This document shows, one piece after another, positions 762-43,008 of a stretch of DNA of 64,000 bases. Within the stretch, counting starts at the first letter, position 1. Each line of letters starts with the position of its first letter. The stretch covers positions 124,001 to 188,000 of IMG/VR virus record IMGVR_UViG_3300013233_000093, one strand, 5' to 3'. The position numbers and the translations under genes were made by a program. The notes below the pieces were generated by a model that saw only the letters and a program-made list of their open reading frames with translations, was not told the DNA's origin and searched no databases.

Positions 762-840
762 ACCGTTTATTCAAAACTATATCACTATTATGATAGATAA
801 CGTGTTGTTGTCTTTACTTTAACCAAAGAGAAATAGAATT
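762..840 (+). promoter_or_regulatory. Early promoter cassette copy 1 (promoter + 5' hairpin + RBS)
   Basis: TATTCAAAACTATATCACTATTATGA at 768-793, then agataac-gtgtt-gttgtct hairpin and aaccaaagagaaatagaa leader; core resembles the phiKZ early motif TATATTAC. Confidence 0.85.
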
Positions 841-1413
841 ATGAGTAATTCCACCCAGTCACCTTCCGTCGGTAACCACGTAACCGATATTAAGACAATT
901 AAGATTCGACTGTCCAACGAGGGCGTGATCGAAAACACATGGTCAGATGTGATGAACCGCAAGGTAAGTCTGCCCGAGCCGTCTGATGCACGCCCGTTCT
1001 TAGGAGATAAGCGGGTGTTCGCCCCGCCCGTGTCGTATAGCGACGAACACCGCGTTACATCACAAGCCATCGCCATCATCGATGACTCGGATCAACTGTC
1101 CACAATTTCCAGCGACCCGGTGCATAATAGTGGGACTTTGATCTACGCGCTAGTTCCGTGGTGGATGGCAGGTCATCGGATCACAGACGACCAAGGTCTT
1201 GTCACCTATACAGCAGCAGACGTAATCAATACACTCACCCTACCACGCCTTGGGGAAATTGTAAAACGTTTTGGCGTGGATGTAATTGTAGTCGGGAAGT
1301 ATACATTCCTAACGCAGTCGGACTACGTTCACGACGGCAGTACGATTTGTCGCACAATCGGTGAAGACGGTAACCCTCATGGCGTGTTCTACGTGGCAAC
1401 GCGCGACCTTTAA
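841..1413 (+). CDS. Hypothetical early protein
   Basis: 190-aa ORF bracketed by its own promoter cassette and terminator. Confidence 0.8.
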   Translation: MSNSTQSPSVGNHVTDIKTIKIRLSNEGVIENTWSDVMNRKVSLPEPSDARPFLGDKRVFAPPVSYSDEHRVTSQAIAIIDDSDQLSTISSDPVHNSGTLIYALVPWWMAGHRITDDQGLVTYTAADVINTLTLPRLGEIVKRFGVDVIVVGKYTFLTQSDYVHDGSTICRTIGEDGNPHGVFYVATRDL

Positions 1414-1435
1414 TTAGAAGAGGCGTTTAATTAAC

Positions 1436-1483
1436 AGCCATCTCCCTCTAGAGGGAGATGGCTTACCATGTCTTTTTTATTTT
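1436..1483 (+). terminator. Hairpin terminator
   Basis: agccatctccctc-ta-gagggagatggct followed by catgtc and a T-tract. Confidence 0.8.
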
Positions 1484-1516
1484 CACCGTTTATTCAAAAC
1501 TATATCACTATTATGA
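1484..1516 (+). promoter_or_regulatory. Early promoter copy 2
   Basis: caccgtt + TATTCAAAACTATATCACTATTATGA (1491-1516), upstream of the operon containing the nvRNAP subunit. Confidence 0.85.
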
Positions 1517-1542
1517 ATGATTAATCAATTGGGATTCTTTTA

Positions 1543-3003
1543 ATGATAAACAGAACTGCGAAATACACCTATGGTGAGATGGACGGTACTGACTATAAGA
1601 GAGAGTTGAGAAACACCACAGACCATGCACTGCGCGTTGTAGATGCAAGTGGGCGTACTCAGATACTATCTCCTATAGCCAGGACTCAGTTCGGTAAAAG
1701 TGACGGTTACTTTACCGTGAAGGAAAAACTGTTAGGCAGGGATGCCGGTTCTTATTTAGACATCCCTAAGTTAGACCCGCCTACTGGCGCGGAAACGTGG
1801 ATTGAGATCAAAACGGCGGTGGACGCCTGTACGGTCCTGCAGTCCACTAATGGCATGTATATCGAAGAAGTGGGTTTACATGTATCCACGGTAGACAGTC
1901 GTTCTAGAACCACACATCCGCGCTTTAGTGCGAATCCGTTTAAACAACTAAAGGACAAGCGCGGTGCAGGACTCTCGTTAGAGCTGCTGGATCCGAACTG
2001 TCAGTACGCCACCTACTACGCTAATGTGGGCGGTGTGGTATTTACAGTGATTCCACAGCGTTCACCGGTACCTTCTGAAGATTGCTTACGGCTTACGCGA
2101 TGGGACGGGCGCTCAGGCGACGCAGTCACCACCAAGACAGACGTCATGAAGGCGTTAACCGGTGAGGGCGAGCATGGGATACGGTTATACCAAACCAGTA
2201 TAGACGCCAAGGCGGATGTTAGAAATCCATTGGTCACGGGCAAGGTAAGCGAGTTAGAAACATCCATTGCTAAATCTCGCACCGATAACGAGAAGTTACG
2301 AGAGCTTATTGCTAAGAACAAAGCCAATGCAGAACAGCTTCGCGTAGAAGCAGCCGAGCGAATGGTGAAGTACGAGCAACGCGCTGGACGAGAAAAGGCA
2401 GAAGCGATCGCGGCACGTGAAACAGAGGCACGTAAACACGAAGCACTGATTGCCACAATGCAACACAAGGCATCGTTAGCCGAGTCACGCAGTGTGGAGG
2501 CGGCACGTGTGGCGTCAGAACGCGCTAAGCAGGACGAGGTCAAACGAGTCGAAGCCGTAGCTGCATTAGCAGAGGCGAAACGTGTGGCGGCCGACAAGGC
2601 CAGGCAGGATGAAGTAAAGAGAGCCGAAGCCGTAGCTGCGTTAGCAGAAGCCAAGGCAGAACATCAACGTCGCCATGAGGCGGCCATCAAGAAAGCAGAG
2701 GTGGATTATGAAGCACGATTGGCAAGAGTGACCGCTGAACAAAAACGTGAGGCGAAAGAGGCGCGTGAGAAGTTCGAGAAAGAGCGTGCAGAGATAATTG
2801 CAGCGGAAGTTGCAGAGCAGGTAAACGCAGTAAAAGACAGAGCCCGACGTGAGTTGGAAGCAGAACGCGCGAAACGCCATCGCGCCGAAGAGACCCTTAA
2901 AACCACAGCCCACGCGGTCAAGAAAGAACAGTGGGCCGTGGTTAAGGTTGCCTTAGGCGTGGTAGCAGCAGCATTCGCACTATGGAAAACGTTTGCCACG
3001 TAA
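1543..3003 (+). CDS. Coiled-coil protein with C-terminal hydrophobic anchor
   Basis: 486 aa; long A/E/K/R-rich coiled coil with a duplicated QDEVKRxEAVAALAEAK; hydrophobic C-terminus; lies between MCP and nvRNAP genes. Confidence 0.8.
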   Translation: MINRTAKYTYGEMDGTDYKRELRNTTDHALRVVDASGRTQILSPIARTQFGKSDGYFTVKEKLLGRDAGSYLDIPKLDPPTGAETWIEIKTAVDACTVLQSTNGMYIEEVGLHVSTVDSRSRTTHPRFSANPFKQLKDKRGAGLSLELLDPNCQYATYYANVGGVVFTVIPQRSPVPSEDCLRLTRWDGRSGDAVTTKTDVMKALTGEGEHGIRLYQTSIDAKADVRNPLVTGKVSELETSIAKSRTDNEKLRELIAKNKANAEQLRVEAAERMVKYEQRAGREKAEAIAARETEARKHEALIATMQHKASLAESRSVEAARVASERAKQDEVKRVEAVAALAEAKRVAADKARQDEVKRAEAVAALAEAKAEHQRRHEAAIKKAEVDYEARLARVTAEQKREAKEAREKFEKERAEIIAAEVAEQVNAVKDRARRELEAERAKRHRAEETLKTTAHAVKKEQWAVVKVALGVVAAAFALWKTFAT

Positions 3004-3063
3004 ATTATCATGCACGTTAGTATTCATTAGATCATACTAAGCATCGTAATAGGGAGCGTTTAT

Positions 3064-4647
3064 ATGTTACAATCCGGTTTTATGCAGAGATTAAGGGCAA
3101 CCAAGCCTGTGCTAAATCCTCGTTTATGCGAGGGGTTGGCGCATCATCAATCTCAGACTTATGAGGGGTACATCGACGCCGTGATGAGGGCGGCATCGTC
3201 AGCATGGCCTGAGGCCATAAAGTACATCGGTGCGCGTCGTGCCACCCCTTTGGAGCAACTAGCGGAAGCTTGCCGGGTAAAACGTAGAAAGCGTAACTTT
3301 GAAGTCGCACGCAGCGACTTGTATTTAATGGTGTACGAGTTGGAGTTACATGGTGAGAAACTGAAGCCTCGATTTATGCTGTTGCCCTACATTCGACGTG
3401 GGTCACTTATGCGCATTCGGGCAGCGACGTATCAGATATCACCAGTGGCAGCAGATAACATTCTAACCGTTGGGTTGGATAAGATCTACATGCCAGTAAC
3501 ACGCTCCAAGTTATACTTCCATAAAGTACACGTGCGGTTCAAGGCCAACGGCAAGTTGGTCTCGATGGATACAGTGCATTCGCTTGTCTACAATGTAGAC
3601 AAAAACACACGAAATACGAAGAGACATTCGTTATTAGTGCATTACATTCTTTGCAAAGCAGGCTTAATTGGAGGCCTGAAACGATACTTAGGTATTGATG
3701 TGGTTGTTGGCCACGCAGAGATAAATGAAACAACCTACCCAACAGACAAATGGGTGATATGTGAATCAACAGGCATTGCCCCTAAAGGCATGCGAGATTA
3801 CTATCCTTCAACCCTACGGATTGCTCTGCGTAAAGAAGACGCTACTACGACGAAGCTGAGTATCATCGGCGGGATCTTTTACATAGCGGATCACGAGCCA
3901 GCATTGGTTCTTGCAGAGGAATCTGAGAACATCGCCATGTGGCGAAGGTTGTTGCCACGCTTCATTATGAAGACAGTGGACTCAGAGAAGAAAGCAGCCG
4001 AAAAGATGGAACAGCATTTTGAATCGCTGAACCACTATATGGATGAGCTAGTAAAACAAAGACTTCAACGAGAGGGCATCGCGTGTGATGACATCTATGA
4101 CGTTTTTGCTGATATGTTAACCACTTTCGAAGCTCGGACCTCTTTCGCCTCACCGGCCAATTTGGGAGATAAGCATCTAGAGACCACACGGTTCGTTTTA
4201 TACGACCTGGTAGCTACGATCTTTCAAACAACATTTGCACTCGCTAAGCTCTCTGGGGAGAGGCTTAACAAAAAGAAGGTGGAACAAACACTTGATGGCA
4301 AGTTTCGGTCAGATGCGATCGAACGGCTTTACAAAGCTCATGGGGAAGTCGAGTCAGTAAGTACTCCGACAGACCTCATGGTAACTTCTACAACACGCAA
4401 CCTGGTGCTCCAACACCGGACAACAACTCGCAGCGGCAGCAAGAACGCCGAGATGAGTGATCGTGCGTATGCGTTGCATGCGTCACAAGGACCCGTATGT
4501 GGCTTTGGTCAAATTACCAAATCACAGCCATCTGGCAGGGGATCGATTAACCATTTCTTACCTCTAAGTGAACGTGACGAAGTTGTAATCTTACCCGAGT
4601 TTACAAAAGAGTTAGAAGATCTTGAGAAAAGCATTGGAGTGGAATAA
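3064..4647 (+). CDS. Non-virion RNA polymerase beta subunit, N-terminal part (phiKZ gp123-like)
   Basis: 527 aa; RSDLYL, LLPY..RG, and C-terminal H.SQ...KSQPSGRGSIN motifs; position downstream of MCP. Confidence 0.75.
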   Translation: MLQSGFMQRLRATKPVLNPRLCEGLAHHQSQTYEGYIDAVMRAASSAWPEAIKYIGARRATPLEQLAEACRVKRRKRNFEVARSDLYLMVYELELHGEKLKPRFMLLPYIRRGSLMRIRAATYQISPVAADNILTVGLDKIYMPVTRSKLYFHKVHVRFKANGKLVSMDTVHSLVYNVDKNTRNTKRHSLLVHYILCKAGLIGGLKRYLGIDVVVGHAEINETTYPTDKWVICESTGIAPKGMRDYYPSTLRIALRKEDATTTKLSIIGGIFYIADHEPALVLAEESENIAMWRRLLPRFIMKTVDSEKKAAEKMEQHFESLNHYMDELVKQRLQREGIACDDIYDVFADMLTTFEARTSFASPANLGDKHLETTRFVLYDLVATIFQTTFALAKLSGERLNKKKVEQTLDGKFRSDAIERLYKAHGEVESVSTPTDLMVTSTTRNLVLQHRTTTRSGSKNAEMSDRAYALHASQGPVCGFGQITKSQPSGRGSINHFLPLSERDEVVILPEFTKELEDLEKSIGVE

Positions 4648-17570: not shown

Positions 17571-17629
17571 CCTCACCGTTTATTCAAAACTATATCACTA
17601 TTATGATGGACAACGTGTTGTTGTCTTTA
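17571..17629 (+). promoter_or_regulatory. Early promoter cassette copy 3
   Basis: cctcaccgtt TATTCAAAACTATATCACTATTATGA tggacaacgtgttgttgtcttta. Confidence 0.9.
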
Positions 17630-17662
17630 CAGCCCTGGCATTTAACAAGAGTATTATAGGTT

Positions 17663-29353: not shown

Positions 29354-29416
29354 CCTCACCGTTTATTCAAAACTATATCACTTAAGGGATAGATAACGTG
29401 TTGTTGTCTTTAGACT
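29354..29416 (+). promoter_or_regulatory. Early promoter cassette copy 4
   Basis: cctcaccgtt TATTCAAAACTATATCAC ttaaggg atagataacgtgttgttgtcttta. Confidence 0.85.
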
Positions 29417-29433
29417 AGAAGAGAGAATGTGAT

Positions 29434-30921: not shown

Positions 30922-30931
30922 CGTAAATCGT

Positions 30932-30971
30932 AAAATAGGCTACTGTTTATACAGCAGCTTATTTTTTTTTT
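30932..30971 (+). terminator. Canonical intrinsic terminator
   Basis: aataggctactgt-ttat-acagcagcttatt followed by a T-run. Confidence 0.75.
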
Positions 30972-31050
30972 AACCACGCAGTAACCTATGGACGCCGCGG
31001 GTGAAATCGTATGTATCCATAGCACATCAAACAACTTAGAGGGTTCTAAG

Positions 31051-32064: not shown

Positions 32065-32095
32065 GTCGTTCATTAACTTAATAGAGGGTTCTATT

Positions 32096-33532: not shown

Positions 33533-33543
33533 ACAATAAGACA

Positions 33544-33579
33544 CGAAGCTGGGATTTCCAGCTTCGGTCTTTTATTTTT
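33544..33579 (+). terminator. Canonical intrinsic terminator
   Basis: cgaagctgg-gattt-ccagcttcg followed by T-rich sequence. Confidence 0.85.
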
Positions 33580-33594
33580 GCTGTGTTGACTAAA

Positions 33595-33643
33595 TATTTA
33601 AAACTATATCACTATTATGATAGATAACGTGTTGTTGTCTTTA
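33595..33643 (+). promoter_or_regulatory. Early promoter cassette copy 5
   Basis: TATTTAAAACTATATCACTATTATGA tagataacgtgttgttgtcttta. Confidence 0.9.
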
Positions 33644-33694
33644 GACTAAGGATACGTCCCGGGCATTTAACTAGCCCATAACAGGAGCAATAGA

Positions 33695-34045
33695 ATGAGT
33701 GATTTATACGATGTAAATGGTAAAGAAGCAGCGGAGTCTATCTATACCAGATTGACTTGGTTAAGTCATGAATGGGATCAATACGCACCCGATCTTGCAA
33801 GTGCATTTGGTATAAGCCGCTCTGAAATTATTACATGTCCCTCTATAACGGAATGTGATGATTTATCAGAAACTGACCTGGTCTACACTGATAACGTATC
33901 GTCCGCCTTGAAAGCATACAAACACGGCGCTGGTATAGTTTTGATAAATCGATACAGGCCGTATGGTGGCATAGCTAAGATAACCGTGGAAACAATCCAT
34001 GGTAGTTGTGTATACATGAGCTTAGATCAATATCCAGACGCTTAA
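33695..34045 (+). CDS. Hypothetical early protein
   Basis: 116 aa; AGGAG RBS. Confidence 0.75.
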   Translation: MSDLYDVNGKEAAESIYTRLTWLSHEWDQYAPDLASAFGISRSEIITCPSITECDDLSETDLVYTDNVSSALKAYKHGAGIVLINRYRPYGGIAKITVETIHGSCVYMSLDQYPDA

Positions 34046-34060
34046 CAGAGGTTTATTAGT

Positions 34061-34459
34061 ATGTTTAAGAAAGATTTAGATCGGTTACTAGCGGCACCTA
34101 CACTGCGCAAACTTGCGTTGTTCATTTCGGAACAGGCGTCATCTGAAGAGACACTGATTTCGTTCCTGGCGTATAACGACAACGGAGTGCCGATGGCGAA
34201 ACGTTATGGACTTCCGGAAATGCCCTTTGAAGCAGGCATCGCAATATCCACCACGGTAACGCATAAATTGGTAGATGATGTGAAACGTACAGCAGTGCAC
34301 GTACACCTTACCACCGCTGACGAGGATGTGTTTACAATCCAGTTGACGTACAAGCGGGATAAGACGTTTATCGAACCACAAGTCTGGCGCACTGGCGAAC
34401 ATTTAAACATTCCATTTATGGATAAAGATATTCTAAACCAAACAGGAGCAATTGCATGA
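34061..34459 (+). CDS. Hypothetical protein
   Basis: 132 aa; GAGG RBS; ATGA-coupled to the HTH gene. Confidence 0.75.
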   Translation: MFKKDLDRLLAAPTLRKLALFISEQASSEETLISFLAYNDNGVPMAKRYGLPEMPFEAGIAISTTVTHKLVDDVKRTAVHVHLTTADEDVFTIQLTYKRDKTFIEPQVWRTGEHLNIPFMDKDILNQTGAIA

Positions 34460-34824
34460 GTAAATTTGTTACCGAGTTGATGCAAGACTTTGCATCTAAA
34501 GAATATAGCGAGGGCTACACACAAGAGTATCTGACATCCAGGCTGGGTGCACAGATCTCCGTGGTGCGTAAAGATCGGGGCATGGGTCTGGATGAACTTG
34601 CTAACCTTGCAGAGGTAACGTTAGAGGTACTATCCGACATCGAGTCTGGCAATATGTCTCACGCCACACCAGCTATTCTATTGCGGATCGCAAGCGAGTT
34701 AGACGTGTGCTTTGACTTCCGCTTAACGAGTTACAGGTCTGTGGCTGAGGACATCGATGCGTTGTCAGAGGACGCATTGCACGTGCCCAGTCGTATGGAT
34801 GATGTGGCTAACGATAATGATTGA
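34456..34824 (+). CDS. XRE-family HTH protein (antitoxin/repressor-like)
   Basis: LGAQISVVRKDRGMGLDELANLAEVTLEVLSDIESG...LLRIASELDV. Confidence 0.85.
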   Translation: MSKFVTELMQDFASKEYSEGYTQEYLTSRLGAQISVVRKDRGMGLDELANLAEVTLEVLSDIESGNMSHATPAILLRIASELDVCFDFRLTSYRSVAEDIDALSEDALHVPSRMDDVANDND

Positions 34825-34911
34825 CTGGCTACCATCGGCTAAAACGGTTACAACTTCCTCAGAAGGAGTATAGATTAATGCACACGTCAACAGAGACCAT
34901 TTAACACACAC

Positions 34912-34956
34912 CTACCCACTGGCATTGCCAGTGGGTAGTATGCAGGTTTTATTTTT
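34912..34956 (+). terminator. Hairpin + TATGCAGG + T-tract
   Basis: ctacccactggc-att-gccagtgggtag. Confidence 0.8.
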
Positions 34957-35001
34957 ACCATCGCCACTGTACTATGAACCTATTATAGAAGGATTAATAA
35001 A

Positions 35002-35934
35002 ATGTCAGATTTAACCACAGCAATACAAGTTAAGCATGAACGACACTACGGCAATTACCCATTCAAGGCACGGGGATTTATTGTTAAGTTCGAAAATGAC
35101 TGCATCGTAGTATCAACAGATGACAGTTATGCGGATGATCCTAAAATAGAGGTATGGGGCGTATCAAGCCTTTGCGAAGACAGCACATTAATCAGGGTCA
35201 ATGTCTGTAACCCCGACGGCAGAAATTCGTTCACTAGCGAGTGGGTTATGCCAAACAGCCTTTATCCAGAGGGGTTTCGTAACCCTAACGATCTTTGGGC
35301 AGATGATGCGAATTACTGGGAAGTGCATTACCAGGCAGGCCACCAATTAGCCGTCGGGATTGAGTTTCAAGATAACGTTAAGCTTATTGATGCTACAAAC
35401 ACTAACCCGCTCTACAAGTTATTGACTTGCATTGCTAACGGTGATTTTAGCATAGCACCTTTAGACGAGGATGTCGCTACACATGCAAGGCTATTAGCCA
35501 CGTATCACGCATTATCTGATAAAACACGGTCTATGGTTAAAGAAGAGTTAGTTACGCTGGGTATACCTTGCATGGCGGCGCTAGATGAGTTTGACATCCA
35601 CGCTCTTTCTACCTACGACGATCATTACGAAGCCATACGTAAAGTAGTATCGAAGGGCAAGCAAGATGGCGTCCTTCTATCTGATAACGATTCGACGAAG
35701 GTGAAAATGCAAACGTTTCGTTATATGACGGAAGGACTTGCGCTTATCGCCCTATACCCTTCCGTAAGCAATGATTTATACAAACTGTTGCGTACTCATA
35801 ACAAAACACGTCTATGTGATTTGTCAGAAGCCCGCACCGAGTACGTTTTACAGGAAGCGATGGCGTTATGCAACTGGCTTATGAAATACAATCCACTAAT
35901 CCAACAAGTATCAGGAGATGCTAATAATGTTTAA
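35002..35934 (+). CDS. Hypothetical protein
   Basis: 310 aa; AAGGA RBS. Confidence 0.8.
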   Translation: MSDLTTAIQVKHERHYGNYPFKARGFIVKFENDCIVVSTDDSYADDPKIEVWGVSSLCEDSTLIRVNVCNPDGRNSFTSEWVMPNSLYPEGFRNPNDLWADDANYWEVHYQAGHQLAVGIEFQDNVKLIDATNTNPLYKLLTCIANGDFSIAPLDEDVATHARLLATYHALSDKTRSMVKEELVTLGIPCMAALDEFDIHALSTYDDHYEAIRKVVSKGKQDGVLLSDNDSTKVKMQTFRYMTEGLALIALYPSVSNDLYKLLRTHNKTRLCDLSEARTEYVLQEAMALCNWLMKYNPLIQQVSGDANNV

Positions 35935-35986
35935 CTTATTTGACATGCCTTAATGCACCACTGGGCCGTCGTCAGTGATCGTCGGT

Positions 35987-36028
35987 TATTCAAAACTATA
36001 TCACTATTATGATAACGATCGTGTTATC
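35987..36028 (+). promoter_or_regulatory. Early promoter cassette copy 6
   Basis: TATTCAAAACTATATCACTATTATGA; hairpin gataac-gatcgt-gttatc. Confidence 0.9.
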
Positions 36029-36059
36029 TAACCTTTAAACAACCAAAGAGATTCGAACT

Positions 36060-36716
36060 ATGAGTACCGATTTAAACGCGTTTGTTGTTATGCATGATAC
36101 GATTGACCGTCTCGTAAAGTTCGGTCTGGAAGGCCGTGATGGCACCATCAAACGGATGGTGGAACGCAACGAAGACTTTTGGCGCTATGCACTTGTTGAG
36201 GAATGTGCGGAGGTGTTGAACGAACTGGGATACAAGCCTTGGAAGTCCGCCGACGTTATCAAGGCCATGCTGGAGCTGGGTGACGTGTGGTACTACGTCG
36301 TAGTAGGCTTTGGCAGGGATAGTCGTGACGACAAAATGCCTGGGGAGTTGACTGAGCTTATGCTTGGAGACGTACGTCCACGTGAAAAGACATTGCCGGA
36401 TGCAGCCGTAGAGCTTATTTCGTACGCGGCGCGAAAGAAGTTACCGGAAGTGGTAACGCAAATGCGTTGCATGGTGAAGATGATGGGGTATTCCACGAAC
36501 GAGTTCTTTAAGATGCAGATGTGGAAATCTGCGTTGGTAGAGCGTCGTTACGCGTACACCGACACTCACGCCGCTAAACAGGTAACTTATCGTGGCAACG
36601 AGATGACGGATGACGCGGCACTTGCCAGTTGGCTTGGAGAGGGCACCTGGCGTGAGTCAGATGCAGAGATGGACAAGACTGAAATGCGCGACTTTCTCAT
36701 GAGTATCATGAGCTAG
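36060..36716 (+). CDS. Divergent dimeric dUTPase / all-alpha NTP pyrophosphatase homologue
   Basis: EECAEV..LGYKPWK and MLELGDVWYY; C-terminal dUTPase motifs are eroded. Confidence 0.75.
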   Translation: MSTDLNAFVVMHDTIDRLVKFGLEGRDGTIKRMVERNEDFWRYALVEECAEVLNELGYKPWKSADVIKAMLELGDVWYYVVVGFGRDSRDDKMPGELTELMLGDVRPREKTLPDAAVELISYAARKKLPEVVTQMRCMVKMMGYSTNEFFKMQMWKSALVERRYAYTDTHAAKQVTYRGNEMTDDAALASWLGEGTWRESDAEMDKTEMRDFLMSIMS

Positions 36717-36790
36717 TCGTAAAATTACATCAACGCACAGACACTCCGTTTGTGCGTTTACATTAGAACCACCCATAGAAGGATAGAAAT

Positions 36791-37600
36791 ATGTACATTC
36801 AAACCATGTTTACAGAGTACAAGATCACCAAGAAATTCGCTGCGGAAGCTGCTGCCATTATTGGCCGTGACCCAGTGTGGTTATTAAACGTGCTGAAGCG
36901 CAAAACCGACCTGCCAAAGAACGTGCTGACAACCACGATTGACGAGCTAGGCACTATCGCGGGACTGGGCAATTTTTCACGGGCATTTATCACCAATGAA
37001 CAGGCGGCGACCGCAACGCATCAGTTGCTGGCATGGCTACGCTTTAACGGCATTTCTATCACCCAGCTGTCAGTTGCATTGGAGTGCTCGCGAAACGCGC
37101 TTTATAAGGCTTTTCAAGACTCCAAGTTATCTGTGTCAATGCTCGGTAAGCTAGAGGAGTTTCTGACAAACATCCCCAAGTTACAATGCAGTACACAGGG
37201 GTTTCGTTTGTTACGTTCGATGAAAAACACCACGCCGCAAGGACGTGCACACACCTCTGCATCAAGGCGGTTAAACCGCACAACCTTGTCGGATTACTTC
37301 GACGATGTAATTCCATGGTGTGAGGTCCGGCATGCCGCAGGCAAGGCAGATACATCCATGCACCAGTATCGCAGCGGTGCCGTAGCGCTGGTAGGCAAGT
37401 CCGCCGCAAGGGCACGTGCAATGGTGGAACAGTTAAACCCCGATTGCCTAGAAGAGTTTGACCGACTGCTTGTAATCCGCGATCGTGGTCATACATCGAG
37501 ACGCGTATCAGAAATGTCTGTATTAACCCGGGAGCTCTCCACGTTAGACGACGAGGAATTTGAGCGCGTGTTAGCCAAGTGTCTTGCGTCTTTTAGCTAG
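36791..37600 (+). CDS. Multi-HTH DNA-binding-like protein
   Basis: WLRFNGISITQLSVALECSRNALYK plus further degenerate HTH units. Confidence 0.7.
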   Translation: MYIQTMFTEYKITKKFAAEAAAIIGRDPVWLLNVLKRKTDLPKNVLTTTIDELGTIAGLGNFSRAFITNEQAATATHQLLAWLRFNGISITQLSVALECSRNALYKAFQDSKLSVSMLGKLEEFLTNIPKLQCSTQGFRLLRSMKNTTPQGRAHTSASRRLNRTTLSDYFDDVIPWCEVRHAAGKADTSMHQYRSGAVALVGKSAARARAMVEQLNPDCLEEFDRLLVIRDRGHTSRRVSEMSVLTRELSTLDDEEFERVLAKCLASFS

Positions 37601-37658
37601 GCCATAACTTACAGCGACGGTTCATGTGAACCGTCGTAATTACCAAAGGATCGTTTTT

Positions 37659-38441
37659 ATGTATTTACAACTGAAGTACGTTACACAGACACTGCCTGAT
37701 TATAAGGCCATTGCACGCACCACGGGTCGTGATGCATTTTGGTGCAAGGGGGTTATGAATGGCCTCTCCATACCAGTGGGTATCGCCAGAGAGTTCGTAC
37801 GTGAGCTGGCTACCTGTGATCCGATATACAAGAAAGCATATCTCTCTATAGGAGAGCGTATGACGTTAGGCGAGGAAGTCCGTGCCTGGATGAAAGCCTA
37901 TGGAGTCACACGCAAGGAGTTTGGTCGTCTGTGTGGGCATAGCGGTCCATGGGTGGGTAAGGTACTCATGGGTGAGTACATCGACCCTCTGGCATCACAG
38001 GCGGCAGTAAGGCTTATCAACAAACTTAACCCACAGAACAAGTCTTTAATGCAAAGACTTATCTCCGCTTCTAGCAAGAAGCGGAGCAACAAACATATGT
38101 ATCCCTTCCGGGACAGCTGGTGTTTGTTTATTGAGAAAGTTATGCATGAGGAGGGTTTGTCGTGCGCTGATGTAGAACGTATCTGTGATAAAGCTACGGG
38201 TTGGCTGCATCCCCGATTGTCTGGGAGAGAAGTGGGGTCTGCTATCATGATGCGTGATTTAGAAGACATTATTCCAGAACGTCACATGCGTCCATACCGG
38301 ACACATTGCGTTAATCGACTCAAGCGGTTCTCACCGGAACGACTTGAGACATGGAGCGAAAGCTCGTCCTTATTATTCAATCTGGATGATGATAAAATGA
38401 AAGACGTATTGAAACAACTGCGATTTGACTTAAGGAGTTAA
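37659..38441 (+). CDS. Multi-HTH (XRE-like) protein, likely paralogue of the upstream gene
   Basis: Start set at the ATG after AAGGA; WMKAYGVTRKEFGRLCGHSGPWVGKV and MHEEGLSCADVERICDKATGWL. Confidence 0.7.
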   Translation: MYLQLKYVTQTLPDYKAIARTTGRDAFWCKGVMNGLSIPVGIAREFVRELATCDPIYKKAYLSIGERMTLGEEVRAWMKAYGVTRKEFGRLCGHSGPWVGKVLMGEYIDPLASQAAVRLINKLNPQNKSLMQRLISASSKKRSNKHMYPFRDSWCLFIEKVMHEEGLSCADVERICDKATGWLHPRLSGREVGSAIMMRDLEDIIPERHMRPYRTHCVNRLKRFSPERLETWSESSSLLFNLDDDKMKDVLKQLRFDLRS

Positions 38442-38445
38442 AAAC

Positions 38446-38715
38446 ATGCGACCAGAAACAACTTTCGGAATCAACCTCCGAGCTTGGAGAAAGAAACACG
38501 GCATTACCCCACGTACAGTGGCGTTTAAAACCGACATCAGTCTAGGGCATTACCGTCACATTGAGCAATCAAAACGACGCTTTAGTGAAGACTGGGCTAA
38601 CGCGTTAATGGTATACATGACGGGCGTCGATGCGTCAGTGAGCACCAAGTACTTCGGTGGCACCCTAGAAGGGGCTGTAACGTACGAACGCACTGCACGA
38701 GGAGGAAACCCATGA
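38446..38715 (+). CDS. XRE-family HTH protein
   Basis: FGINLRAWRKKHGIT...ISLGHYRHIEQSKRR. Confidence 0.85.
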   Translation: MRPETTFGINLRAWRKKHGITPRTVAFKTDISLGHYRHIEQSKRRFSEDWANALMVYMTGVDASVSTKYFGGTLEGAVTYERTARGGNP

Positions 38716-39188
38716 AGTCATTTAGCAATCAGCTCCGTGGCCTCTTTGGCGGGAACACAGAGACACGCGACGAGTTAGACGATCTCATTGATCTGCTGGA
38801 ACCGTTGAACGTGTTGCCGGGCGATGTCACCGACCTGCATTTAATGCAGCCGATGGTGCAGCAGATTGTCCGCGATCGAATCCGTCCCATTTCCATGGCG
38901 CGCTGTGATAGTTCAGAGGTGTGTAATATCACCGCTGGCGTCATGCATGTGGTGGACAACCATCGTAATAAACAAGACATGGCTGTGTCTACTGTAGAGA
39001 TGATACTGGGCATGACCATCTCCATGCAAGAGGATTTAATCGCCTCTTTCTTAGAGCGGTCAAATCCTCGCATTCACACATATGTACGTGCCACTGCGTA
39101 CGACGCGAAGCATTTAGTCAACGTGCCATTACACGCGCTGACCGAAGATAACAACTACGTGAAAGAGTTCATCTCTAATCGCAGTTAA
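38712..39188 (+). CDS. Hypothetical protein
   Basis: 158 aa; GAGGAGG RBS; ATGA overlap. Confidence 0.8.
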   Translation: MKSFSNQLRGLFGGNTETRDELDDLIDLLEPLNVLPGDVTDLHLMQPMVQQIVRDRIRPISMARCDSSEVCNITAGVMHVVDNHRNKQDMAVSTVEMILGMTISMQEDLIASFLERSNPRIHTYVRATAYDAKHLVNVPLHALTEDNNYVKEFISNRS

Positions 39189-39198
39189 CCACTAACTA

Positions 39199-39246
39199 CA
39201 CCATGCCTAATTTAGGCATGGTGCTCTATACCACTTTTTATTTTTA
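39199..39246 (+). terminator. Hairpin terminator
   Basis: caccatgcctaa-t-ttaggcatggtg followed by T-rich sequence. Confidence 0.75.
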
Positions 39247-39259
39247 TAGGATTTTTAGC

Positions 39260-39913
39260 ATGTGGAACAATCTTAAATACCACCTTGGGTTTGCGAGCGA
39301 GGCTTATCTCAGGGATAGACTATCTGCGATACACGCCGAAGTTAAGGAATACTACGACCCTGTGGACGCGTTAGAATACATCTATCCGTATATGAAGAAG
39401 GGCCGTACCACGGTATCTGATGTCAAGGCAGTCGAAGAACGGCAGTGTATATGGAAGCTCAAAGTCTCAGTTATAATGGAGATTGTAGCAGACGTCGCGT
39501 GCATGCGTCATGAGTGGCGCGATACGCTAAACACTGCGTTACAGGAAGAACACCTCTTTGTAGCGGATAAGTTATACGACCATGACCGTGCGTTTATATT
39601 GTCAGACCTACATATACTGGAGGAAATCAAGTCGGTTGTAAAACACGTACGGCTTTTAGAACACAACTCGCCCAAAGCCTTCACGCCATCGCCGACCAAA
39701 AAGACGGCGTCTAAAAAGAATAACGCGGAACTACGTGGGTTTATTGCAGGGACGCTAACGGATAGGCAGCTTAATATGCCATGCCTCGCTTCCGGTGCGA
39801 TAAAAAACCTTGCGGGGTTGTTACACCATGAGACGGAGTTTAACAATGCCTGTAACTCATTAAAGCATTACAACGAAGTTTACATCGAGGCGAAGGTGTA
39901 TTTCATGCGATGA
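39260..39913 (+). CDS. Hypothetical helical protein
   Basis: Start set at ATG 39260 (AGGA RBS, downstream of the terminator). Confidence 0.75.
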   Translation: MWNNLKYHLGFASEAYLRDRLSAIHAEVKEYYDPVDALEYIYPYMKKGRTTVSDVKAVEERQCIWKLKVSVIMEIVADVACMRHEWRDTLNTALQEEHLFVADKLYDHDRAFILSDLHILEEIKSVVKHVRLLEHNSPKAFTPSPTKKTASKKNNAELRGFIAGTLTDRQLNMPCLASGAIKNLAGLLHHETEFNNACNSLKHYNEVYIEAKVYFMR

Positions 39914-39942
39914 GGCTGTACTCAGTTTCTGTGTTTACCAAA

Positions 39943-40015
39943 TATTCAAAACTATATCACTATTATGATGGACAACGTGTTGTTGTCTTTACTTTAACCA
40001 AAGAGAAATAGAACT
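39943..40015 (+). promoter_or_regulatory. Early promoter cassette copy 7
   Basis: Nearly identical to 768-840 from promoter through hairpin and RBS to the ATG. Confidence 0.9.
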
Positions 40016-40663
40016 ATGAACATCGCACAAATCGACAGCAGCGCAGAGCATCCACATCACAGCATTCCGGTGCTAACAACACTGCACTACGTGCTGTCTA
40101 AAATGAAAGACGGTGAAACAATGACCGCTAAGAAGCTGCATTTAGTAACCGGTATTACAGTTACTGGATGGGGTGCGCTAGCGAATGATGTAGAAAAGGT
40201 GACACAGGAAGAGATCTACAATGTGGCACGTAATTGGCGGCAAGCAACCGACCTGGATGCGGGACGGTGCGTTACAGCAGTGCCCGTAGGTCAGAACCAG
40301 TTATACCTGCAGGTGGATACAAAATCCACCAGCGGCGGGAGCGTCGTGCACTTCGGCCACGAAAGCTGTGATGACATGGGCGAGTTCCTTGGCATCATGA
40401 CAAACGAGGACGTGTTAGTGGTAATGTATGAAAACGGCATTACAGTACTACGTATGTTGCAAGGCGGGTTCCGTAAAGTTTGCGCCGCTATCTCTAAAGA
40501 CACTCACCGTATGGAGATGCTCTATAACATGATCGTCACCGACGGCGGCGTTGTGATTTACTATTACGCTTCTGGTGAGCGTATGTTGATACTTATCCCA
40601 AATGAGGATATTGCCGCCACGGGCGTCGTGCACGAGATGCCCGACACTGCCGTGATGCATTAA
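40016..40663 (+). CDS. Hypothetical early protein
   Basis: 215 aa between a promoter cassette and a terminator. Confidence 0.8.
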   Translation: MNIAQIDSSAEHPHHSIPVLTTLHYVLSKMKDGETMTAKKLHLVTGITVTGWGALANDVEKVTQEEIYNVARNWRQATDLDAGRCVTAVPVGQNQLYLQVDTKSTSGGSVVHFGHESCDDMGEFLGIMTNEDVLVVMYENGITVLRMLQGGFRKVCAAISKDTHRMEMLYNMIVTDGGVVIYYYASGERMLILIPNEDIAATGVVHEMPDTAVMH

Positions 40664-40672
40664 CAGTTGAAC

Positions 40673-40710
40673 AGGGAGTCCTCGATGGAGGACGCCTTTT
40701 TCTTTTTTAT
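40673..40710 (+). terminator. Canonical intrinsic terminator
   Basis: gtcctc-gatg-gaggac followed by T-rich sequence. Confidence 0.7.
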
Positions 40711-40755
40711 TATATCGAACAGTATTACTTGACTATAACTACGAGAGCTTATAAC

Positions 40756-41280
40756 ATGCAAAACGAAAAACAGATCCGTGCTACGTTACGCGGTATTATC
40801 AGAGACCACTTAAAATCCGTAAAGCATCTTAAGTGTGACCCCATGTACTTTACATCAGATATACTGATCTCAAAACTTGGACTGGATCTACTGGTCAATG
40901 GCCGCAGTCACGATCTGCAAATGAAGATGAACGCATTGGACACTAAGTCGTTGCAGTCACTGGCGACGCAGTTACATTGGTGTGTTACTAATTACAACAT
41001 GAAGCTTAAACTCATTGCCATTACGAGATCCATGGTAATGTGCAGCACTAAGTTTAGTAGCGATGCTGTCATCGACTTTGATGCGGAACGACAAGCGTTG
41101 TATTTAAACGCTACGGGCGTATTGTTAAAGATGCCGTTATTGTTACTGCGCACCGACTTCCACGTAGCAAAACGTTGTATCTCCGGCGCATGTCACCAAA
41201 TCATCTTTGGTAAAGAGTTTACACCGTGCACAGAGGAAGACTTCAACACGCCGTGGGCACGTGAGTGGAGTGTCCAATGA
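40756..41280 (+). CDS. Hypothetical protein
   Basis: Start set at ATG 40756. Confidence 0.7.
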   Translation: MQNEKQIRATLRGIIRDHLKSVKHLKCDPMYFTSDILISKLGLDLLVNGRSHDLQMKMNALDTKSLQSLATQLHWCVTNYNMKLKLIAITRSMVMCSTKFSSDAVIDFDAERQALYLNATGVLLKMPLLLLRTDFHVAKRCISGACHQIIFGKEFTPCTEEDFNTPWAREWSVQ

Positions 41281-41399
41281 ACCTTCGAACGCTGTTGTTA
41301 CTGACGTGTCTTGGCACTGCGTGGCTGTACGGATCCAATCACAACTGGTTTACTGACGGTGAGATTAAGCCCATGAGTTCGTTGTTCTACGGAGAATAG
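41277..41399 (+). CDS. Small secreted/membrane peptide (40 aa, not in ORF track)
   Basis: ATGA overlap and GGAG RBS; MNLRTLLLLTCLGTAWLYG. Confidence 0.55.
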   Translation: MNLRTLLLLTCLGTAWLYGSNHNWFTDGEIKPMSSLFYGE

Positions 41400-41401
41400 C
41401 C

Positions 41402-41818
41402 ATGCACAGCAAAGACGGGGTAGAAATGGCCATTAACGTTATAATGAGAATAATGTTAGTTGGTGTTGGATGGGTTATTCACGCAGCACACATGTCGGAC
41501 GCACAAGCGCTGACGTTCACTGTTTGCGCGGTGTTGGTTACGTCCATGCCGGACATACTCGCATACACATTTACCGTGATGCCCGAACTGCGTAAGCGCA
41601 GGCGCAGTGAGCGGTTGAAGGGGATGTTCACTATGGCCACGTTGATGCACAACGCAGGTAAGCGCAGTAAGTGCCTCGGCTATCAGTTTGCAAAAGACGC
41701 GGGGTTTCAAAGACCCTCGTTCACACACAGTTTTAGAGATTTTGACGACGATGAACTGAAAGAACAGCACGCGCTTCTTAAAGACGTCGTTAACAAATTG
41801 GGGATTACGGTAAAATGA
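41402..41818 (+). CDS. Membrane protein (2 TM)
   Basis: Two N-terminal hydrophobic helices; GGAG RBS. Confidence 0.75.
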   Translation: MHSKDGVEMAINVIMRIMLVGVGWVIHAAHMSDAQALTFTVCAVLVTSMPDILAYTFTVMPELRKRRRSERLKGMFTMATLMHNAGKRSKCLGYQFAKDAGFQRPSFTHSFRDFDDDELKEQHALLKDVVNKLGITVK

Positions 41819-42003
41819 ACGACTATATTAACAACGAGTTTGCTAATGCTACTTCGTGGACTAAGCTAAAACTATTATACAAACTTATCAGTACAATGCC
41901 TGCGTTAAAGTGGACGCTGGTGGTTTTTGTGGTACCCAGTCTGCTGGGCACCATCATGGGCGTTGCAGGGTTAATCGGCGTCATAGGGAGTATACTACCA
42001 TGA
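41815..42003 (+). CDS. Small membrane protein
   Basis: ATGA overlaps at both ends; hydrophobic C-terminal half. Confidence 0.7.
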   Translation: MNDYINNEFANATSWTKLKLLYKLISTMPALKWTLVVFVVPSLLGTIMGVAGLIGVIGSILP

Positions 42004-42281
42004 TCGACTTTATATTAGCGGCGGTAATTGGAGCGGCCACCGTGTATGCATGTCCCATAATGCTTCACGTCAGCATGGTGCCCGTCGTGATATACCGTAC
42101 ATTGAGATTGTTAGTAACACCATTATCAGTGGCCTTTGTGGCCTTTGTCGCATTTAGTAATTACCAAGGACTATACAAGATGACAAGATACGAAACCAGC
42201 GTCTTAGCCATAGCGACGATCGCGTTCGCTGTAATCAACATTGTTATTTGGCTTGTTGTAAAATCCAAGAAGGATGAGTAA
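42000..42281 (+). CDS. Small 3-TM membrane protein
   Basis: Start set at ATG 42000 (ATGA overlap, GGAG RBS). Confidence 0.7.
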   Translation: MIDFILAAVIGAATVYACPIMLHVSMVPVVIYRTLRLLVTPLSVAFVAFVAFSNYQGLYKMTRYETSVLAIATIAFAVINIVIWLVVKSKKDE

Positions 42282-42283
42282 CT

Positions 42284-42916
42284 ATGTTTATCGTAGTAGA
42301 AGGATCTGACGGCTCCGGTAAATCCACCGTATGCCAATACATTGTGAAGTACCTTACCGCGAATAAGATACCTTGCATATCGGTATCCGACTTAGACGGT
42401 AATCGATACGGTGCTATGTTTAGAGATATGCTGGAAAATCCGAGGGTACCGCCACCCTCGCTGATTACCAAGACATTGTTGTTACTAACGTCCCGCTCTG
42501 AAAACGTTAATAACACTATCTTACCCGCGTTAGACGACGGCAAGGTCGTTGTATCAGATCGTTATATAGACAGCACTGTTGTGTATCAAGGAGCAGAAGG
42601 GCTGGATGTGGGCACCTTACGCACACTAAACTCGTTTGCAACCGATAACCTGGTGCCGGATTTGACCATCCTATTACAAGTGGAACCTGATATAGCCAAG
42701 GCTAGAATACTATCGAGCGGGGCACCCGATGAGATGGAAGCCAGTATGATGAGTCGGATATCTGAACTCAACGATCGGTATGTTAACGAGATACGACACA
42801 CTACGGTATTGATTGACGCTAATCAACCCGTGACACAGGTGCTGGAAACGATACGGGAAGTGTTGGTGTCTGCGCTAGCTGACCATGTACTGGGCGACGT
42901 GATGGATTCGCAATAA
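42284..42916 (+). CDS. tmk: Thymidylate kinase
   Basis: FIVVEGSDGSGKST P-loop, SDRYIDSTVVYQG, PDLTILL. Confidence 0.95.
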   Translation: MFIVVEGSDGSGKSTVCQYIVKYLTANKIPCISVSDLDGNRYGAMFRDMLENPRVPPPSLITKTLLLLTSRSENVNNTILPALDDGKVVVSDRYIDSTVVYQGAEGLDVGTLRTLNSFATDNLVPDLTILLQVEPDIAKARILSSGAPDEMEASMMSRISELNDRYVNEIRHTTVLIDANQPVTQVLETIREVLVSALADHVLGDVMDSQ

Positions 42917-42918
42917 CT

Positions 42919-42955
42919 ATAATGACTGCTGCTTGTGTGGCGGTCATTATGCTGT
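42919..42955 (+). terminator. Hairpin + TATGCTGT, no U-tract
   Basis: ataatgactgctgc-ttgt-gtggcggtcattat with TATGCTGT at 42948-42955. Confidence 0.7.
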
Positions 42956-42965
42956 TCTCCAGATT

Positions 42966-43008
42966 TATTCAAAACTATATCACTATTATGATACTTAGGT
43001 AATGTATT
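42966..43008 (+). promoter_or_regulatory. Early promoter copy 8
   Basis: TATTCAAAACTATATCACTATTATGA tacttaggtaat. Confidence 0.9.

What the first reader, a model, noticed from the sequence alone, without database searches (positions are those of the whole stretch)
762..43008. Portable early-promoter cassette repeated eight times
Seen: TATT(C/T)AAAACTATATCAC(TATTATGA) at 768, 1491, 17581, 29364, 33595, 35987, 39943 and 42966, with TATATTAC variants at 44840, 51371 and 58470. Identity extends well beyond a promoter: 768-840 and 39943-40015, 39 kb apart, differ at only three positions through the hairpin, RBS and up to the ATG, in front of unrelated genes. Known: the phiKZ early promoter core is TATATTAC, and T4-like PeSL elements are promoter-stem-loop units that shuffle early genes by recombination. 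Inference: a recombinogenic expression cassette that captures and rearranges accessory genes. One cassette unit (841-1413) sits inside the core capsid-RNAP block.
Basis: partly seen in the sequence, partly recalled or inferred. Interest (0 to 1): 0.65.

Follow-up and report, generated by a model that had tools for sequence, protein, structure and literature searches.

The report
Jumbo-phage early promoter cassettes with leader hairpin
The repeats are the early promoters of an uncultured phiKZ-like giant phage, each fused to a short hairpin and ribosome-binding leader; the promoters are ordinary for this family, but the units have swapped parts with each other and sit at the edges of gained or replaced genes.

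Summary
The 223-kb genome holds 27 sites, all on the + strand and intergenic.

The window belongs to an uncultured phiKZ-like (Chimalliviridae) phage. The 27-nt box fits published early (virion-RNAP) promoter consensuses of this family, and five sites are positionally conserved in a relative whose core proteins are about 46% identical. So the promoter itself is ordinary.

Less ordinary:
- 21 of 27 boxes are followed within 0-8 nt by a stem-loop of at least six sequence types (background 6-13%). phiKZ lacks this feature; the sister phage shares it.
- Homology runs from the upstream stop codon or terminator tail to the ATG, then falls to background.
- Upstream, hairpin and post-hairpin modules occur in all combinations, which implies exchange between copies.
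- Cassette-headed runs are poor in conserved genes (18/99 vs 72/142, p = 2e-7).
- ORF 841-1413, flanked by two cassettes, is missing from all four relatives, and parsimony on the tree makes it a gain.

The T4 PeSL analogy therefore holds as a way of working, not as membership: the promoter is not sigma-70-like. No transcript data, close relatives or circle evidence could be obtained.

The parts
701..737 (+). Terminator of the major capsid gene: a GC-rich hairpin (701-728) plus the phiKZ-type tail TATGCCGTC (729-737)
   Evidence: Sequence. The same hairpin-plus-ATGCCGT tail follows the MCP gene in four relatives. It matches the published phiKZ terminator motif ending YTTATKYYGT (bioRxiv 10.1101/2023.10.13.562163).
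768..840 (+). Cassette 1: 27-nt box 768-794, A'-type stem-loop 795-813, purine-rich SD leader up to the ATG at 841
   Evidence: It differs from cassette 39943-40015 at 3 of 73 positions.
841..1413 (+). 190-aa ORFan, the payload of a cassette-bounded single-gene unit inserted in the MCP-RNAP core block
   Evidence: No Pfam or PHROG family. It finds only itself in the 5.8-billion-protein word search. There is no tblastn hit in G001, L068, L070 or L072, and no room for it in their MCP-to-next-gene spacers. It is a gain by parsimony on the RNAP tree. The same arrangement is 100% identical in a second sample.
1436..1490 (+). The unit's own terminator hairpin (1436-1463), followed by a T-rich tail and CACCGTT leading into the next box
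   Evidence: The tail-plus-CACCGTT module recurs upstream of the boxes at genome 51283 and 59314 (18-20 nt tracts).
1491..1542 (+). Cassette 2: box 1491-1517, no stem-loop, unique leader. This is the resident promoter of the nvRNAP-subunit operon.
   Evidence: All four relatives have a CTATATTACC core at the same position, between the MCP terminator and the homolog of ORF 1543-3003.
1543..4647 (+). 486-aa gene (1543-3003, homolog of the ~330-aa gene in relatives) and RNAP beta-like subunit (3064-4647). These are conserved core-block genes driven by cassette 2.
   Evidence: blastp E 1e-34 to 1e-8 against relatives. phrog_2943 at 2e-121. tblastn hits to annotated RNAP beta subunits of phiKZ-like phages.
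17581..17662 (+). Cassette 3: box 17581-17607, A-type stem-loop 17608-17626, ATG at 17663. It heads an ~11.7-kb operon that includes the NAD-dependent ligase and a dUTPase.
   Evidence: The upstream 15 nt starting at the preceding stop codon are identical to those at 29364.
29364..29433 (+). Cassette 4: box 29364-29390 with a variant 3' end, A' stem-loop 29391-29409, ATG at 29434. It heads the operon carrying the NMNAT-Nudix and NAMPT genes.
33595..33694 (+). Cassette 5: box 33595-33621 (TATTT variant), A' stem-loop 33622-33640, ATG at 33695. It is preceded by terminator 33544-33566.
35987..36059 (+). Cassette 6: box 35987-36013, B-type stem-loop 36011-36028 (GATAAC...GTTATC), ATG at 36060
   Evidence: The same stem family follows promoter cores in the relative G001.
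39943..40015 (+). Cassette 7: box 39943-39969, A-type stem-loop 39970-39988, ATG at 40016
42966..43006 (+). Cassette 8: box 42966-42992 with a partial C-type leader and no strong stem. It is followed by small membrane-peptide ORFs.
44830..44896 (+). Variant cassette: TATATTAC core at 44840-44847, stem-loop 44854-44871, ATG at 44897. The position is conserved in the relative.
   Evidence: The downstream gene has a G001 homolog that is preceded by a CCATATTACC core plus hairpin.
51361..51447 (+). Variant cassette: TATATTAC core at 51371-51378 followed by CTTAGTGA, stem-loop 51388-51405, then a 60-aa lipoprotein-like ORF
58460..58558 (+). Variant cassette: TATATTAC core at 58470-58477 followed by TTTAGTGA, C-type stem-loop 58487-58508 plus a second hairpin, ATG at 58559
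   Evidence: Its leader shares 13+27+47 nt with the cassette at genome 198919.

Best explanation
The repeats are the early promoters of an uncultured phiKZ-like (Chimalliviridae) jumbo phage, read by the RNA polymerase that is packaged in the virion. By analogy with phiKZ, transcription should start at the G of the terminal TATGAT, which puts the CTATAT(C/T)AC core at about -14 to -7.

Most copies are built into a stop-to-start unit of about 100 nt. The parts, in order, are:
- a terminator tail or the stop codon of the gene before;
- a short upstream module;
- the 27-nt box;
- a stem-loop lying 0-4 nt from the predicted 5' end of the RNA;
- a purine-rich ribosome-binding leader and the ATG.

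The stem-loop most likely acts in the RNA as a 5'-terminal stabiliser or common regulatory handle for early messages. That role is inferred.

The box and hairpin are long and near-identical, so they also serve as patches of homology. Copies have exchanged modules, and recombination between them has bounded the gain or replacement of accessory genes. An example is the promoter-ORF-terminator unit at 768-1490, inside the capsid-RNAP core block. This is a passive way of working like the T4 PeSL elements, not a dedicated capture machine.

Shown: the anatomy, the strand and position bias, conservation in relatives, module mosaicism, and the indel and its polarity. Inferred: the start site, the hairpin's role, and recombination as the cause of the indels.
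For: Promoter identity:
- phiKZ-type MCP and RNAP subunit genes are present.
- The box fits the TTTYAARR...TATATTAC...(A/G)TG consensuses of N1M2, OBP, 201phi2-1 and EL (PMC7058600).
- All 27 sites are on the + strand and intergenic, upstream of + strand ORFs.
- Five positions are conserved in G001, and the MCP-downstream one in all four relatives.
- The TG at +6/+7 after the core is shared with phiKZ promoters. The literature places the motif at about -10 (PMC7598289).
- The box is not sigma-70-like.

Hairpin:
- 21 of 27 sites have a stem of at least 6 bp, against 6% at random positions and 13% in other 5' regions. At least six unrelated stem sequences occupy the same position.
- The GAYAAC stem family is shared with G001. 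It pairs in 100% of cells and shows a C-G / U.G / U-A series.

Exchange and mobility:
- Homology tracts run from the stop codon to the ATG and then collapse.
- Upstream, hairpin and post-hairpin modules occur in all pairwise combinations.
- Cassette-headed runs are depleted in G001 homologs: 18/99 vs 72/142, p = 2e-7.
- First genes after cassettes are ORFans.
- Three single-gene units of 723-818 bp lie between two cassettes.
- ORF 841-1413 is absent in four relatives and is a gain by parsimony.
- The slot at genome 58496-59314 holds an unrelated gene in G001, between the same conserved neighbours.
Against:
- The nearest relatives are only 44-49% identical in a core protein, so no breakpoint can be placed at nucleotide level. 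Gene turnover by any other mechanism would look similar at this distance.
- Covariation in the GAYAAC stem is not significant by itself (147 of 500 shuffles reach it). Four of six pairs never vary, which would equally fit a sequence-specific site.
- Most cassettes head multi-gene operons, not single portable genes.
- First genes after cassettes are not significantly less conserved than other genes (5/24 vs 85/217, p = 0.12).
- No RecA or Rad51-type recombinase was detected with Pfam models.
- The inserted genes have native composition.
Confidence: 0.6

Rival explanations
1. They are early promoters with a functional leader and nothing more. The long identity is kept by selection from a stringent virion RNAP and a shared 5' UTR function. 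Gene gain and loss in early regions happens by unrelated (illegitimate) events. Only insertions that bring or land behind a promoter survive, so promoters end up at their edges (moron-like accretion).
For: Published consensuses in this family are already 20-34 nt long and occur at about 30 sites per genome. The GAYAAC stem is conserved across phages whose proteins are only ~46% identical, which argues for selection rather than recent copying. Single-gene promoter-terminator units in phiKZ have been read as moron-like. No junction or circle evidence exists here.
Against: Selection on function does not explain why multi-nucleotide upstream, hairpin and post-hairpin modules are found in all combinations. 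It does not explain why linked neutral variants travel together: the TTTTC box variant occurs with GTTAGA and TTTTAACT at 55234 and 58496. It also does not explain why two independent single-gene units end in the same 25-nt tail-plus-CACCGTT module.
Confidence: 0.3
2. The palindromic GAYAAC...GTTRTC element after the box is a DNA operator for a phage-encoded dimeric regulator that shuts early transcription off, rather than an RNA stem-loop.
For: The stem sequence, not just the pairing, is conserved between this phage and G001, and four of six pairs never vary. Its position just downstream of the predicted start would suit a roadblock.
Against: The spacing between the half-sites varies from 4 to 8 nt. 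G.U-type intermediates break DNA symmetry but keep RNA pairing. Unrelated stems (types C, D, F) occupy the same place at other cassettes.
Confidence: 0.07
3. The box is a host sigma-70-type early promoter, as in T4 and its PeSLs.
For: The box is AT-rich and contains TATTAT and TTCAAA hexamer-like strings.
Against: The consensus scan calls none of the six boxes in 28000-46000, and sigma-70-like sites are not enriched (26 found vs 32.6 expected). The hexamer spacing within the box is about 10 nt. The genome encodes phiKZ-type RNAPs, and the core matches the phiKZ early motif.
Confidence: 0.02

Closest known systems
Early (virion-RNAP) promoters of phiKZ-like jumbo phages (phiKZ TATATTAC; extended consensuses of 201phi2-1, OBP, N1M2, EL)
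   Same: The core CTATAT(C/T)AC, the TT(C/T)AAA(A) tract just upstream and the (A/G)TG 6-7 nt downstream are shared. So are the numbers (tens of copies per genome), the single-strand orientation and the position at the head of operons of unknown-function genes and RNAP-subunit genes. Two phiKZ promoters (2665 and 4516) also share their whole leader.
   Different: The core has C instead of T at position 6 in 22 of the 27 sites. The box is near-invariant over 27 nt. A stem-loop follows in 21 of 27 sites, whereas 1 of 7 phiKZ promoters in the first 50 kb has one, which is background level. No transcript mapping exists for this phage.
PeSL (promoter-early stem-loop) cassettes of T4-like phages (Arbiol et al. 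2010, PMC2839356; Comeau et al. 2014, PMC4122927)
   Same: [quoted passage not shown] Both are concentrated in variable regions in front of ORFans, and both include single-gene units of 0.7-0.8 kb flanked by two copies. In both, indels and replacements relative to related phages are bounded by the elements.
   Different: The promoter is for a phage multisubunit RNAP, not sigma-70. The conserved stem-loop lies downstream of the promoter in the transcript and is weak and AT-rich, not a G/C-rich terminator. Upstream terminators are separate and variable, and only 11 of 27 cassettes have one. The phage family is different. Mini-circles and nucleotide-level crossovers have not been shown.
Morons / autonomous promoter-gene-terminator units (Juhala et al. 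2000; suggested for phiKZ single-gene transcription units in bioRxiv 10.1101/2023.10.13.562163)
   Same: The unit at window 768-1490 has its own promoter, one ORF and its own terminator. It sits between two genes that are adjacent in relatives.
   Different: Morons are not thought to depend on conserved flanking sequence. Here both ends of the unit are cassette-family modules shared with other sites.
5'-terminal stem-loops that stabilise bacterial mRNAs (e.g. the ompA leader; own knowledge, not tested here)
   Same: The predicted stem starts 0-4 nt from the inferred 5' end, which is the geometry known to hinder 5'-end-dependent decay.
   Different: The start site and any effect on half-life are inferred only.

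Membership tests
phiKZ-type virion-RNAP early promoter | The genome encodes phiKZ-type multisubunit RNAP subunits and a phiKZ-type capsid | tested here: met
   phrog_2943 at 2e-121 and phrog_3231. tblastn hits to RNAP beta subunits of 251 phiKZ-like phages. PF25620 PhiKZ_MCP in the syntenic relatives and in this contig.
phiKZ-type virion-RNAP early promoter | A conserved AT-rich core of about 10 nt of the TATATTAC type, with family-typical flanks | tested here: met
   CTATATCAC or CTATATTAC is present at all 27 sites. The flanks fit the consensuses in PMC7058600 Table 2. TG at +6/+7 matches phiKZ.
phiKZ-type virion-RNAP early promoter | Intergenic, co-oriented with the downstream genes, at the head of early operons | tested here: met
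   27 of 27 sites are on the + strand, upstream of + strand ORFs.
phiKZ-type virion-RNAP early promoter | Promoter positions conserved in related phages | tested here: met
   Five positions are shared with G001, and the MCP-downstream one with all four relatives.
phiKZ-type virion-RNAP early promoter | Motif centred at about -10 of mapped early transcript 5' ends; host-RNAP independent | not testable with these tools
The phage is uncultured.
T4-type PeSL | Strong sigma-70-like early promoter | tested here: not met
   No box is called as sigma-70-like, and such sites are not enriched.
T4-type PeSL | Composite promoter plus stem-loop conserved over about 100 bp from stop codon to ATG | tested here: met
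   Tracts of up to 77 nt end at the ATG, and upstream tracts of 15-20 nt begin at the stop codon or terminator tail. A stem-loop is present in 21 of 27 sites.
T4-type PeSL | The stem-loop acts as terminator or attenuator of upstream transcription | tested here: inconclusive
   The conserved stem lies downstream of the box and is weak (-5 to -9 kcal/mol). One copy meets the loose terminator pattern. Separate upstream terminators occur at 11 of 27 cassettes. No functional test was possible.
T4-type PeSL | Enriched in variable regions in front of ORFans | tested here: met
   18/99 vs 72/142 genes are conserved in G001, odds ratio 0.22, p = 2e-7. Of 12 cassette-proximal ORFs scanned, only one has a firm family hit, a PHROG of unknown function; three others have sub-threshold hits.
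T4-type PeSL | Indels or replacements between related phages bounded by the elements | tested here: met
   This is met at gene level only. ORF 841-1413 is absent in four relatives. There is an unrelated gene in the 58496-59314 slot in G001. Breakpoints cannot be resolved at 44-49% identity.
T4-type PeSL | Mini-circles formed by recombination between neighbouring elements | not testable with these tools
   No read data were available.
Moron | An autonomous promoter-gene-terminator unit inserted between genes that are adjacent in relatives | tested here: met
   Window 768-1490 has a box, a 190-aa ORF and its own terminator, and lies between MCP and the 486-aa gene.

The most novel reading that the evidence does not exclude
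The cassettes may be substrates of an efficient, possibly factor-assisted exchange system in nucleus-forming jumbo phages. In this reading, box-to-box recombination makes small circles that carry one gene and one chimeric cassette, and these re-insert at any other cassette (integron-like gene traffic driven by the phage's own early promoters). The conserved GAYAAC 5' stem-loop would be a specific handle, recognised by a phage protein, that marks early messages for stabilisation, export or timed shut-off.
Probability: 0.1. Interest if true: 0.8.

Novelty: new variant of a known kind. Interest (0 to 1): 0.45.

Why it matters
Nucleus-forming jumbo phages keep a fixed core genome beside a large, fast-changing set of early genes that includes anti-defence functions. 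How that set turns over is not known. If their own early promoter-leader units act as the homology patches for gene gain, loss and replacement, as PeSLs do in T4-like phages, that would give a testable mechanism. It would also give a practical rule: landing sites are where the box is. In addition, the near-invariant 27-nt box and its leader types are ready-made parts for predicting early regulons in uncultured relatives and for engineering such phages.

Tried and rejected
- Close relatives:
  - Megablast against cultured phages found nothing.
  - The 21-nt box had no match in IMG/VR. A degenerate 17-mer gave 59 scattered single chance hits.
  - The 20-mer in JGI metagenome contigs gave 6 unrelated AT-rich contigs.
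  - A protein-pattern scan of IMG/VR found no relative of the RNAP subunit.
- Strain-level variation: L070/L071 and L072/L073 are identical. The second-sample contig L099 is identical to window 424-1617. Exact-protein look-ups of two flanking genes found only the source contig.
- Recombinase: no RecA or Rad51 Pfam match was found in the genome. UvsX is reported as a core gene of the family (PMC10299810), so this is a sensitivity limit, not evidence of absence.
- Rfam: no family matched in the window. tRNAs: none.
- Paralogy of downstream genes as the cause of shared leaders: rejected.
- Foreign origin of inserted genes: GC and GC3 are native-like.
- Sigma-70 promoter reading: rejected.
- Formal covariation test of the GAYAAC stem: all cells pair, but the result is not significant.
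- Leader mini-ORF: I considered a mini-ORF starting at the ATG inside the box. It is 4-13 codons long and differs between leader types. The ATG is replaced by GTG or GGG in some copies and would be cut by the predicted start site. I judged it unlikely and did not pursue it.
- The original phiKZ transcription paper (PMC4178840) is not held.

Full report
**1. The observation**

The 18-mer is present at all eight stated coordinates, only on the + strand, with zero matches in 100 shuffles. The three TATATTAC variants are also where stated. The pair 768-840 and 39943-40015 differs at 795, 798 and 839 only. Identity is 15/60 just after the ATG and 21/60 before the box. The proteins behind the cassettes are not paralogs.

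Anchored information content shows a near-invariant box of 27 nt, a half-conserved segment at +27 to +48, and weak signal at -8 to -1.

The window is bases 124001-188000 of a 222,906-bp IMG/VR virus record with a 239-bp terminal repeat. Genome-wide there are 21 strict and 6 looser sites, all on the + strand.

**2. What genome this is**

The window starts with the end of a phiKZ-type major capsid gene. It also carries a multisubunit-RNAP beta-like subunit.

No cultured phage is close: identity is at most about 32% for this subunit. The nearest metagenomic relatives are 44-49% identical. Four of them were fetched. One is a 197.5-kb IMG/VR record (G001), which I fetched whole.

On an RNAP-subunit tree this phage and G001 are sisters (99/97 support). 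L068, L070 and L072 lie in the neighbouring clade.

**3. The box is the family's early promoter**

Reviews state that every RNAP-encoding jumbo phage has its own conserved AT-rich motif centred near -10 of early transcription start sites (TSSs), read by the virion RNAP (PMC7598289).

Published consensuses for N1M2, OBP, 201phi2-1 and EL are 20-34 nt long and read TTTYAARR...TATATTAC...(A/G)TG (PMC7058600). The present box has the same layout.

In phiKZ itself, TATATTAC occurs 7 times on the + strand and never on the - strand in the first 50 kb, and TG sits at +6/+7 after the core, as it does here. That places the likely start at the G of TATGAT. This also matches the T(-3)ATG(+1) rule reported for phiKZ late promoters.

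All four relatives have a terminator and then a CTATATTACC-type core between the capsid gene and the homolog of ORF 1543-3003. Four further positions are shared with G001.

The box is not sigma-70-like. No transcript data could be obtained, so the start site is inferred.

**4. The hairpin**

A stem of at least 6 bp starts within 8 nt of the box end at 21 of 27 sites. The background is 6% at random positions and 13% in the 5' regions of other + strand genes.

The stems fall into at least six sequence types:
- A and A' (11 copies, plus a bulged variant at 59314);
- B (4 copies);
- C (3 full and 2 partial copies);
- three singletons.

So position and structure recur with unrelated sequences. The two substitutions that separate A from A' both keep pairing.

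G001 carries promoter cores followed by GATAACAC-NTCC-GTGTTAT at three sites. It also has a second repeated leader family. The promoter-plus-GAYAAC-stem layout therefore predates the split of the two phages. phiKZ lacks it.

A formal pair count on the GAYAAC family shows 100% pairing and one compensatory position. It is not significant, because four of six pairs never vary.

With the inferred start site the stems begin 0-4 nt from the RNA 5' end. This is the geometry of 5'-terminal stabilising stem-loops (own knowledge). A DNA-operator reading is less likely because loop length varies from 4 to 8 nt and G.U intermediates occur.

**5. Evidence that copies exchange parts**

Pairwise tracts reach 77 nt (124768/163943) and end at the ATG. 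The 58496/118545 tract ends exactly at the ATG. Upstream tracts of 15-20 nt begin at the preceding stop codon (141581/153364) or in the terminator tail (51283/59314/125491).

Among the type-A copies, three kinds of module reassort:
- upstream modules, 8-14 nt each;
- the two-nucleotide hairpin allele;
- post-hairpin modules, at least 5 nt each.

They occur in all pairwise combinations: U1 or U2 with A or A', and A or A' with D1 or D3. A simple duplication tree cannot produce this. Crossovers inside the invariant box and the hairpin can.

Linked variants mark local lineages. Sites 48900, 55234 and 58496 share GTTAGA, type A and TTTTAACT, and the last two also share a TTTTC box variant.

**6. 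Cassettes and gene turnover**

With a crude ORF map, 90 of 263 ORFs have a G001 homolog. ORFs in cassette-headed co-directional runs are conserved in 18 of 99 cases, against 72 of 142 elsewhere (odds ratio 0.22, p = 2e-7). The first genes alone do not differ significantly (5/24 vs 85/217, p = 0.12).

Window 17581-51345 is a 34-kb array of such operons with only four G001 homologs. The order of two of them, ligase and thymidylate kinase, is inverted between the phages. [quoted passage not shown]

Three single-gene units lie between two cassettes: 733, 818 and 723 bp.

The 723-bp unit is window 768-1490.
- It has a box, an A' leader almost identical to the one at 39943, a 190-aa ORFan, its own terminator, and a tail-plus-CACCGTT module shared with 51283 and 59314.
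- It is absent from G001, L068, L070 and L072. Parsimony on the tree makes it a gain in this lineage.
- It is present unchanged in a second sample.

At 58496-59314, G001 has an unrelated 205-aa gene between the same conserved neighbours, followed by its own core plus GAYAAC hairpin.

The locus upstream of the divergent helicase holds a promoter and different small genes in every phage compared.

**7. Comparison with known systems**

As a promoter, this is a new member of the phiKZ-type early class.

As a stop-to-start composite that marks variable regions and bounds indels, it works like the T4 PeSL (PMC2839356). It fails PeSL's defining sigma-70 feature, and its stem-loop has a different place and character. 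It is therefore an analogue in another phage family, not a member.

The single-gene unit also fits the moron definition, except that both of its ends are cassette modules. I found no paper that links PeSL-type shuffling to phiKZ-like phages. The only joint mention is a reference-list entry. Single-gene transcription units in phiKZ have been called moron-like.

**8. Limits**

- There are no transcript 5' ends, no read-level junctions and no close relatives.
- ORF calls are crude.
- The G001 record is linear. CheckV rates it 71% complete, although its ends abut within the RNAP operon.
- No recombinase was detected by Pfam.

**9. Verdict**

The promoter reading is well supported (about 0.9). A passive PeSL-like role in module exchange and gene gain is plausible and partly supported (about 0.6 for the combined statement). 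An active capture mechanism is not shown.

Noticed in passing
window 29364-33595: This operon lies between two A'-type cassettes. It carries an NMNAT (cytidylyltransferase-like) plus Nudix fusion (30988-32064) and a NAMPT (32096-33532; PF04095 at 1.9e-44). Together they form an NAD+ salvage pair like the phage NAD-reconstitution anti-defence pathways (own knowledge). Neither gene has a homolog in the sister phage G001.
   Followed up: partly
window 729-737; L068, L069, L070, L072 after the MCP gene: The tail (T)ATGCCGT directly after the capsid-gene terminator hairpin is conserved in this phage and four relatives. It matches the published phiKZ terminator motif ending YTTATKYYGT. Genome-wide there are 17 (+) and 16 (-) such tails behind strong hairpins.
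   Followed up: partly
window 841-1413: The inserted 190-aa ORFan has language-model feature look-alikes in YqgF/RuvX-like (Holliday-junction-resolvase-like) clusters (score 0.90, 170 shared features). It has no Pfam hit, and the Atlas model is poor (pLDDT 0.31). This is a weak lead only.
   Followed up: no
window 43007-43117, 43141-43263, 51448-51630: Small hydrophobic ORFs lie directly behind cassettes: two putative single-pass membrane peptides (36 and 40 aa) and a 60-aa ORF with a lipobox-like LVGC.
   Followed up: no
upstream of many boxes, e.g. window 753-761, 33581-33589, 39929-39937, 58446-58454: A recurrent CTGTGT(T/C) element sits 9-14 nt upstream of the box in about 8 of 27 cassettes, roughly -38 from the inferred start. 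It may be an upstream promoter element.
   Followed up: no
L097 (phiKZ NC_004629) 2665 and 4516: Two phiKZ early promoters 1.85 kb apart share about 20 nt upstream and about 45 nt of leader down to the SD, in front of PHIKZ006 and PHIKZ010.1. Promoter-plus-leader duplication therefore also occurs in phiKZ.
   Followed up: no
G001 (L081-L090) 36100 and 98203; 119864, 127438, 184335: The sister phage has its own repeated promoter-leader families in front of unrelated genes. One family has a GATCATAA(A/G)C...TTTATGGC stem and the other a GATAACAC...GTGTTAT stem.
   Followed up: partly
window 22174-24153 and 42284-42916 vs G001 24553-26625 and 19234-19860: The ligase and the thymidylate kinase are among the few shared genes of the variable early region, and they lie in opposite relative order in the two phages. 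This indicates rearrangement within the early array.
   Followed up: no
window 790-823 and equivalents: The ATG inside the box opens a short reading frame through the hairpin (about 10 codons in type A and B leaders, 4 in type C). It is probably incidental, because the inferred start site would cut it and the ATG is GTG or GGG in some copies.
   Followed up: no
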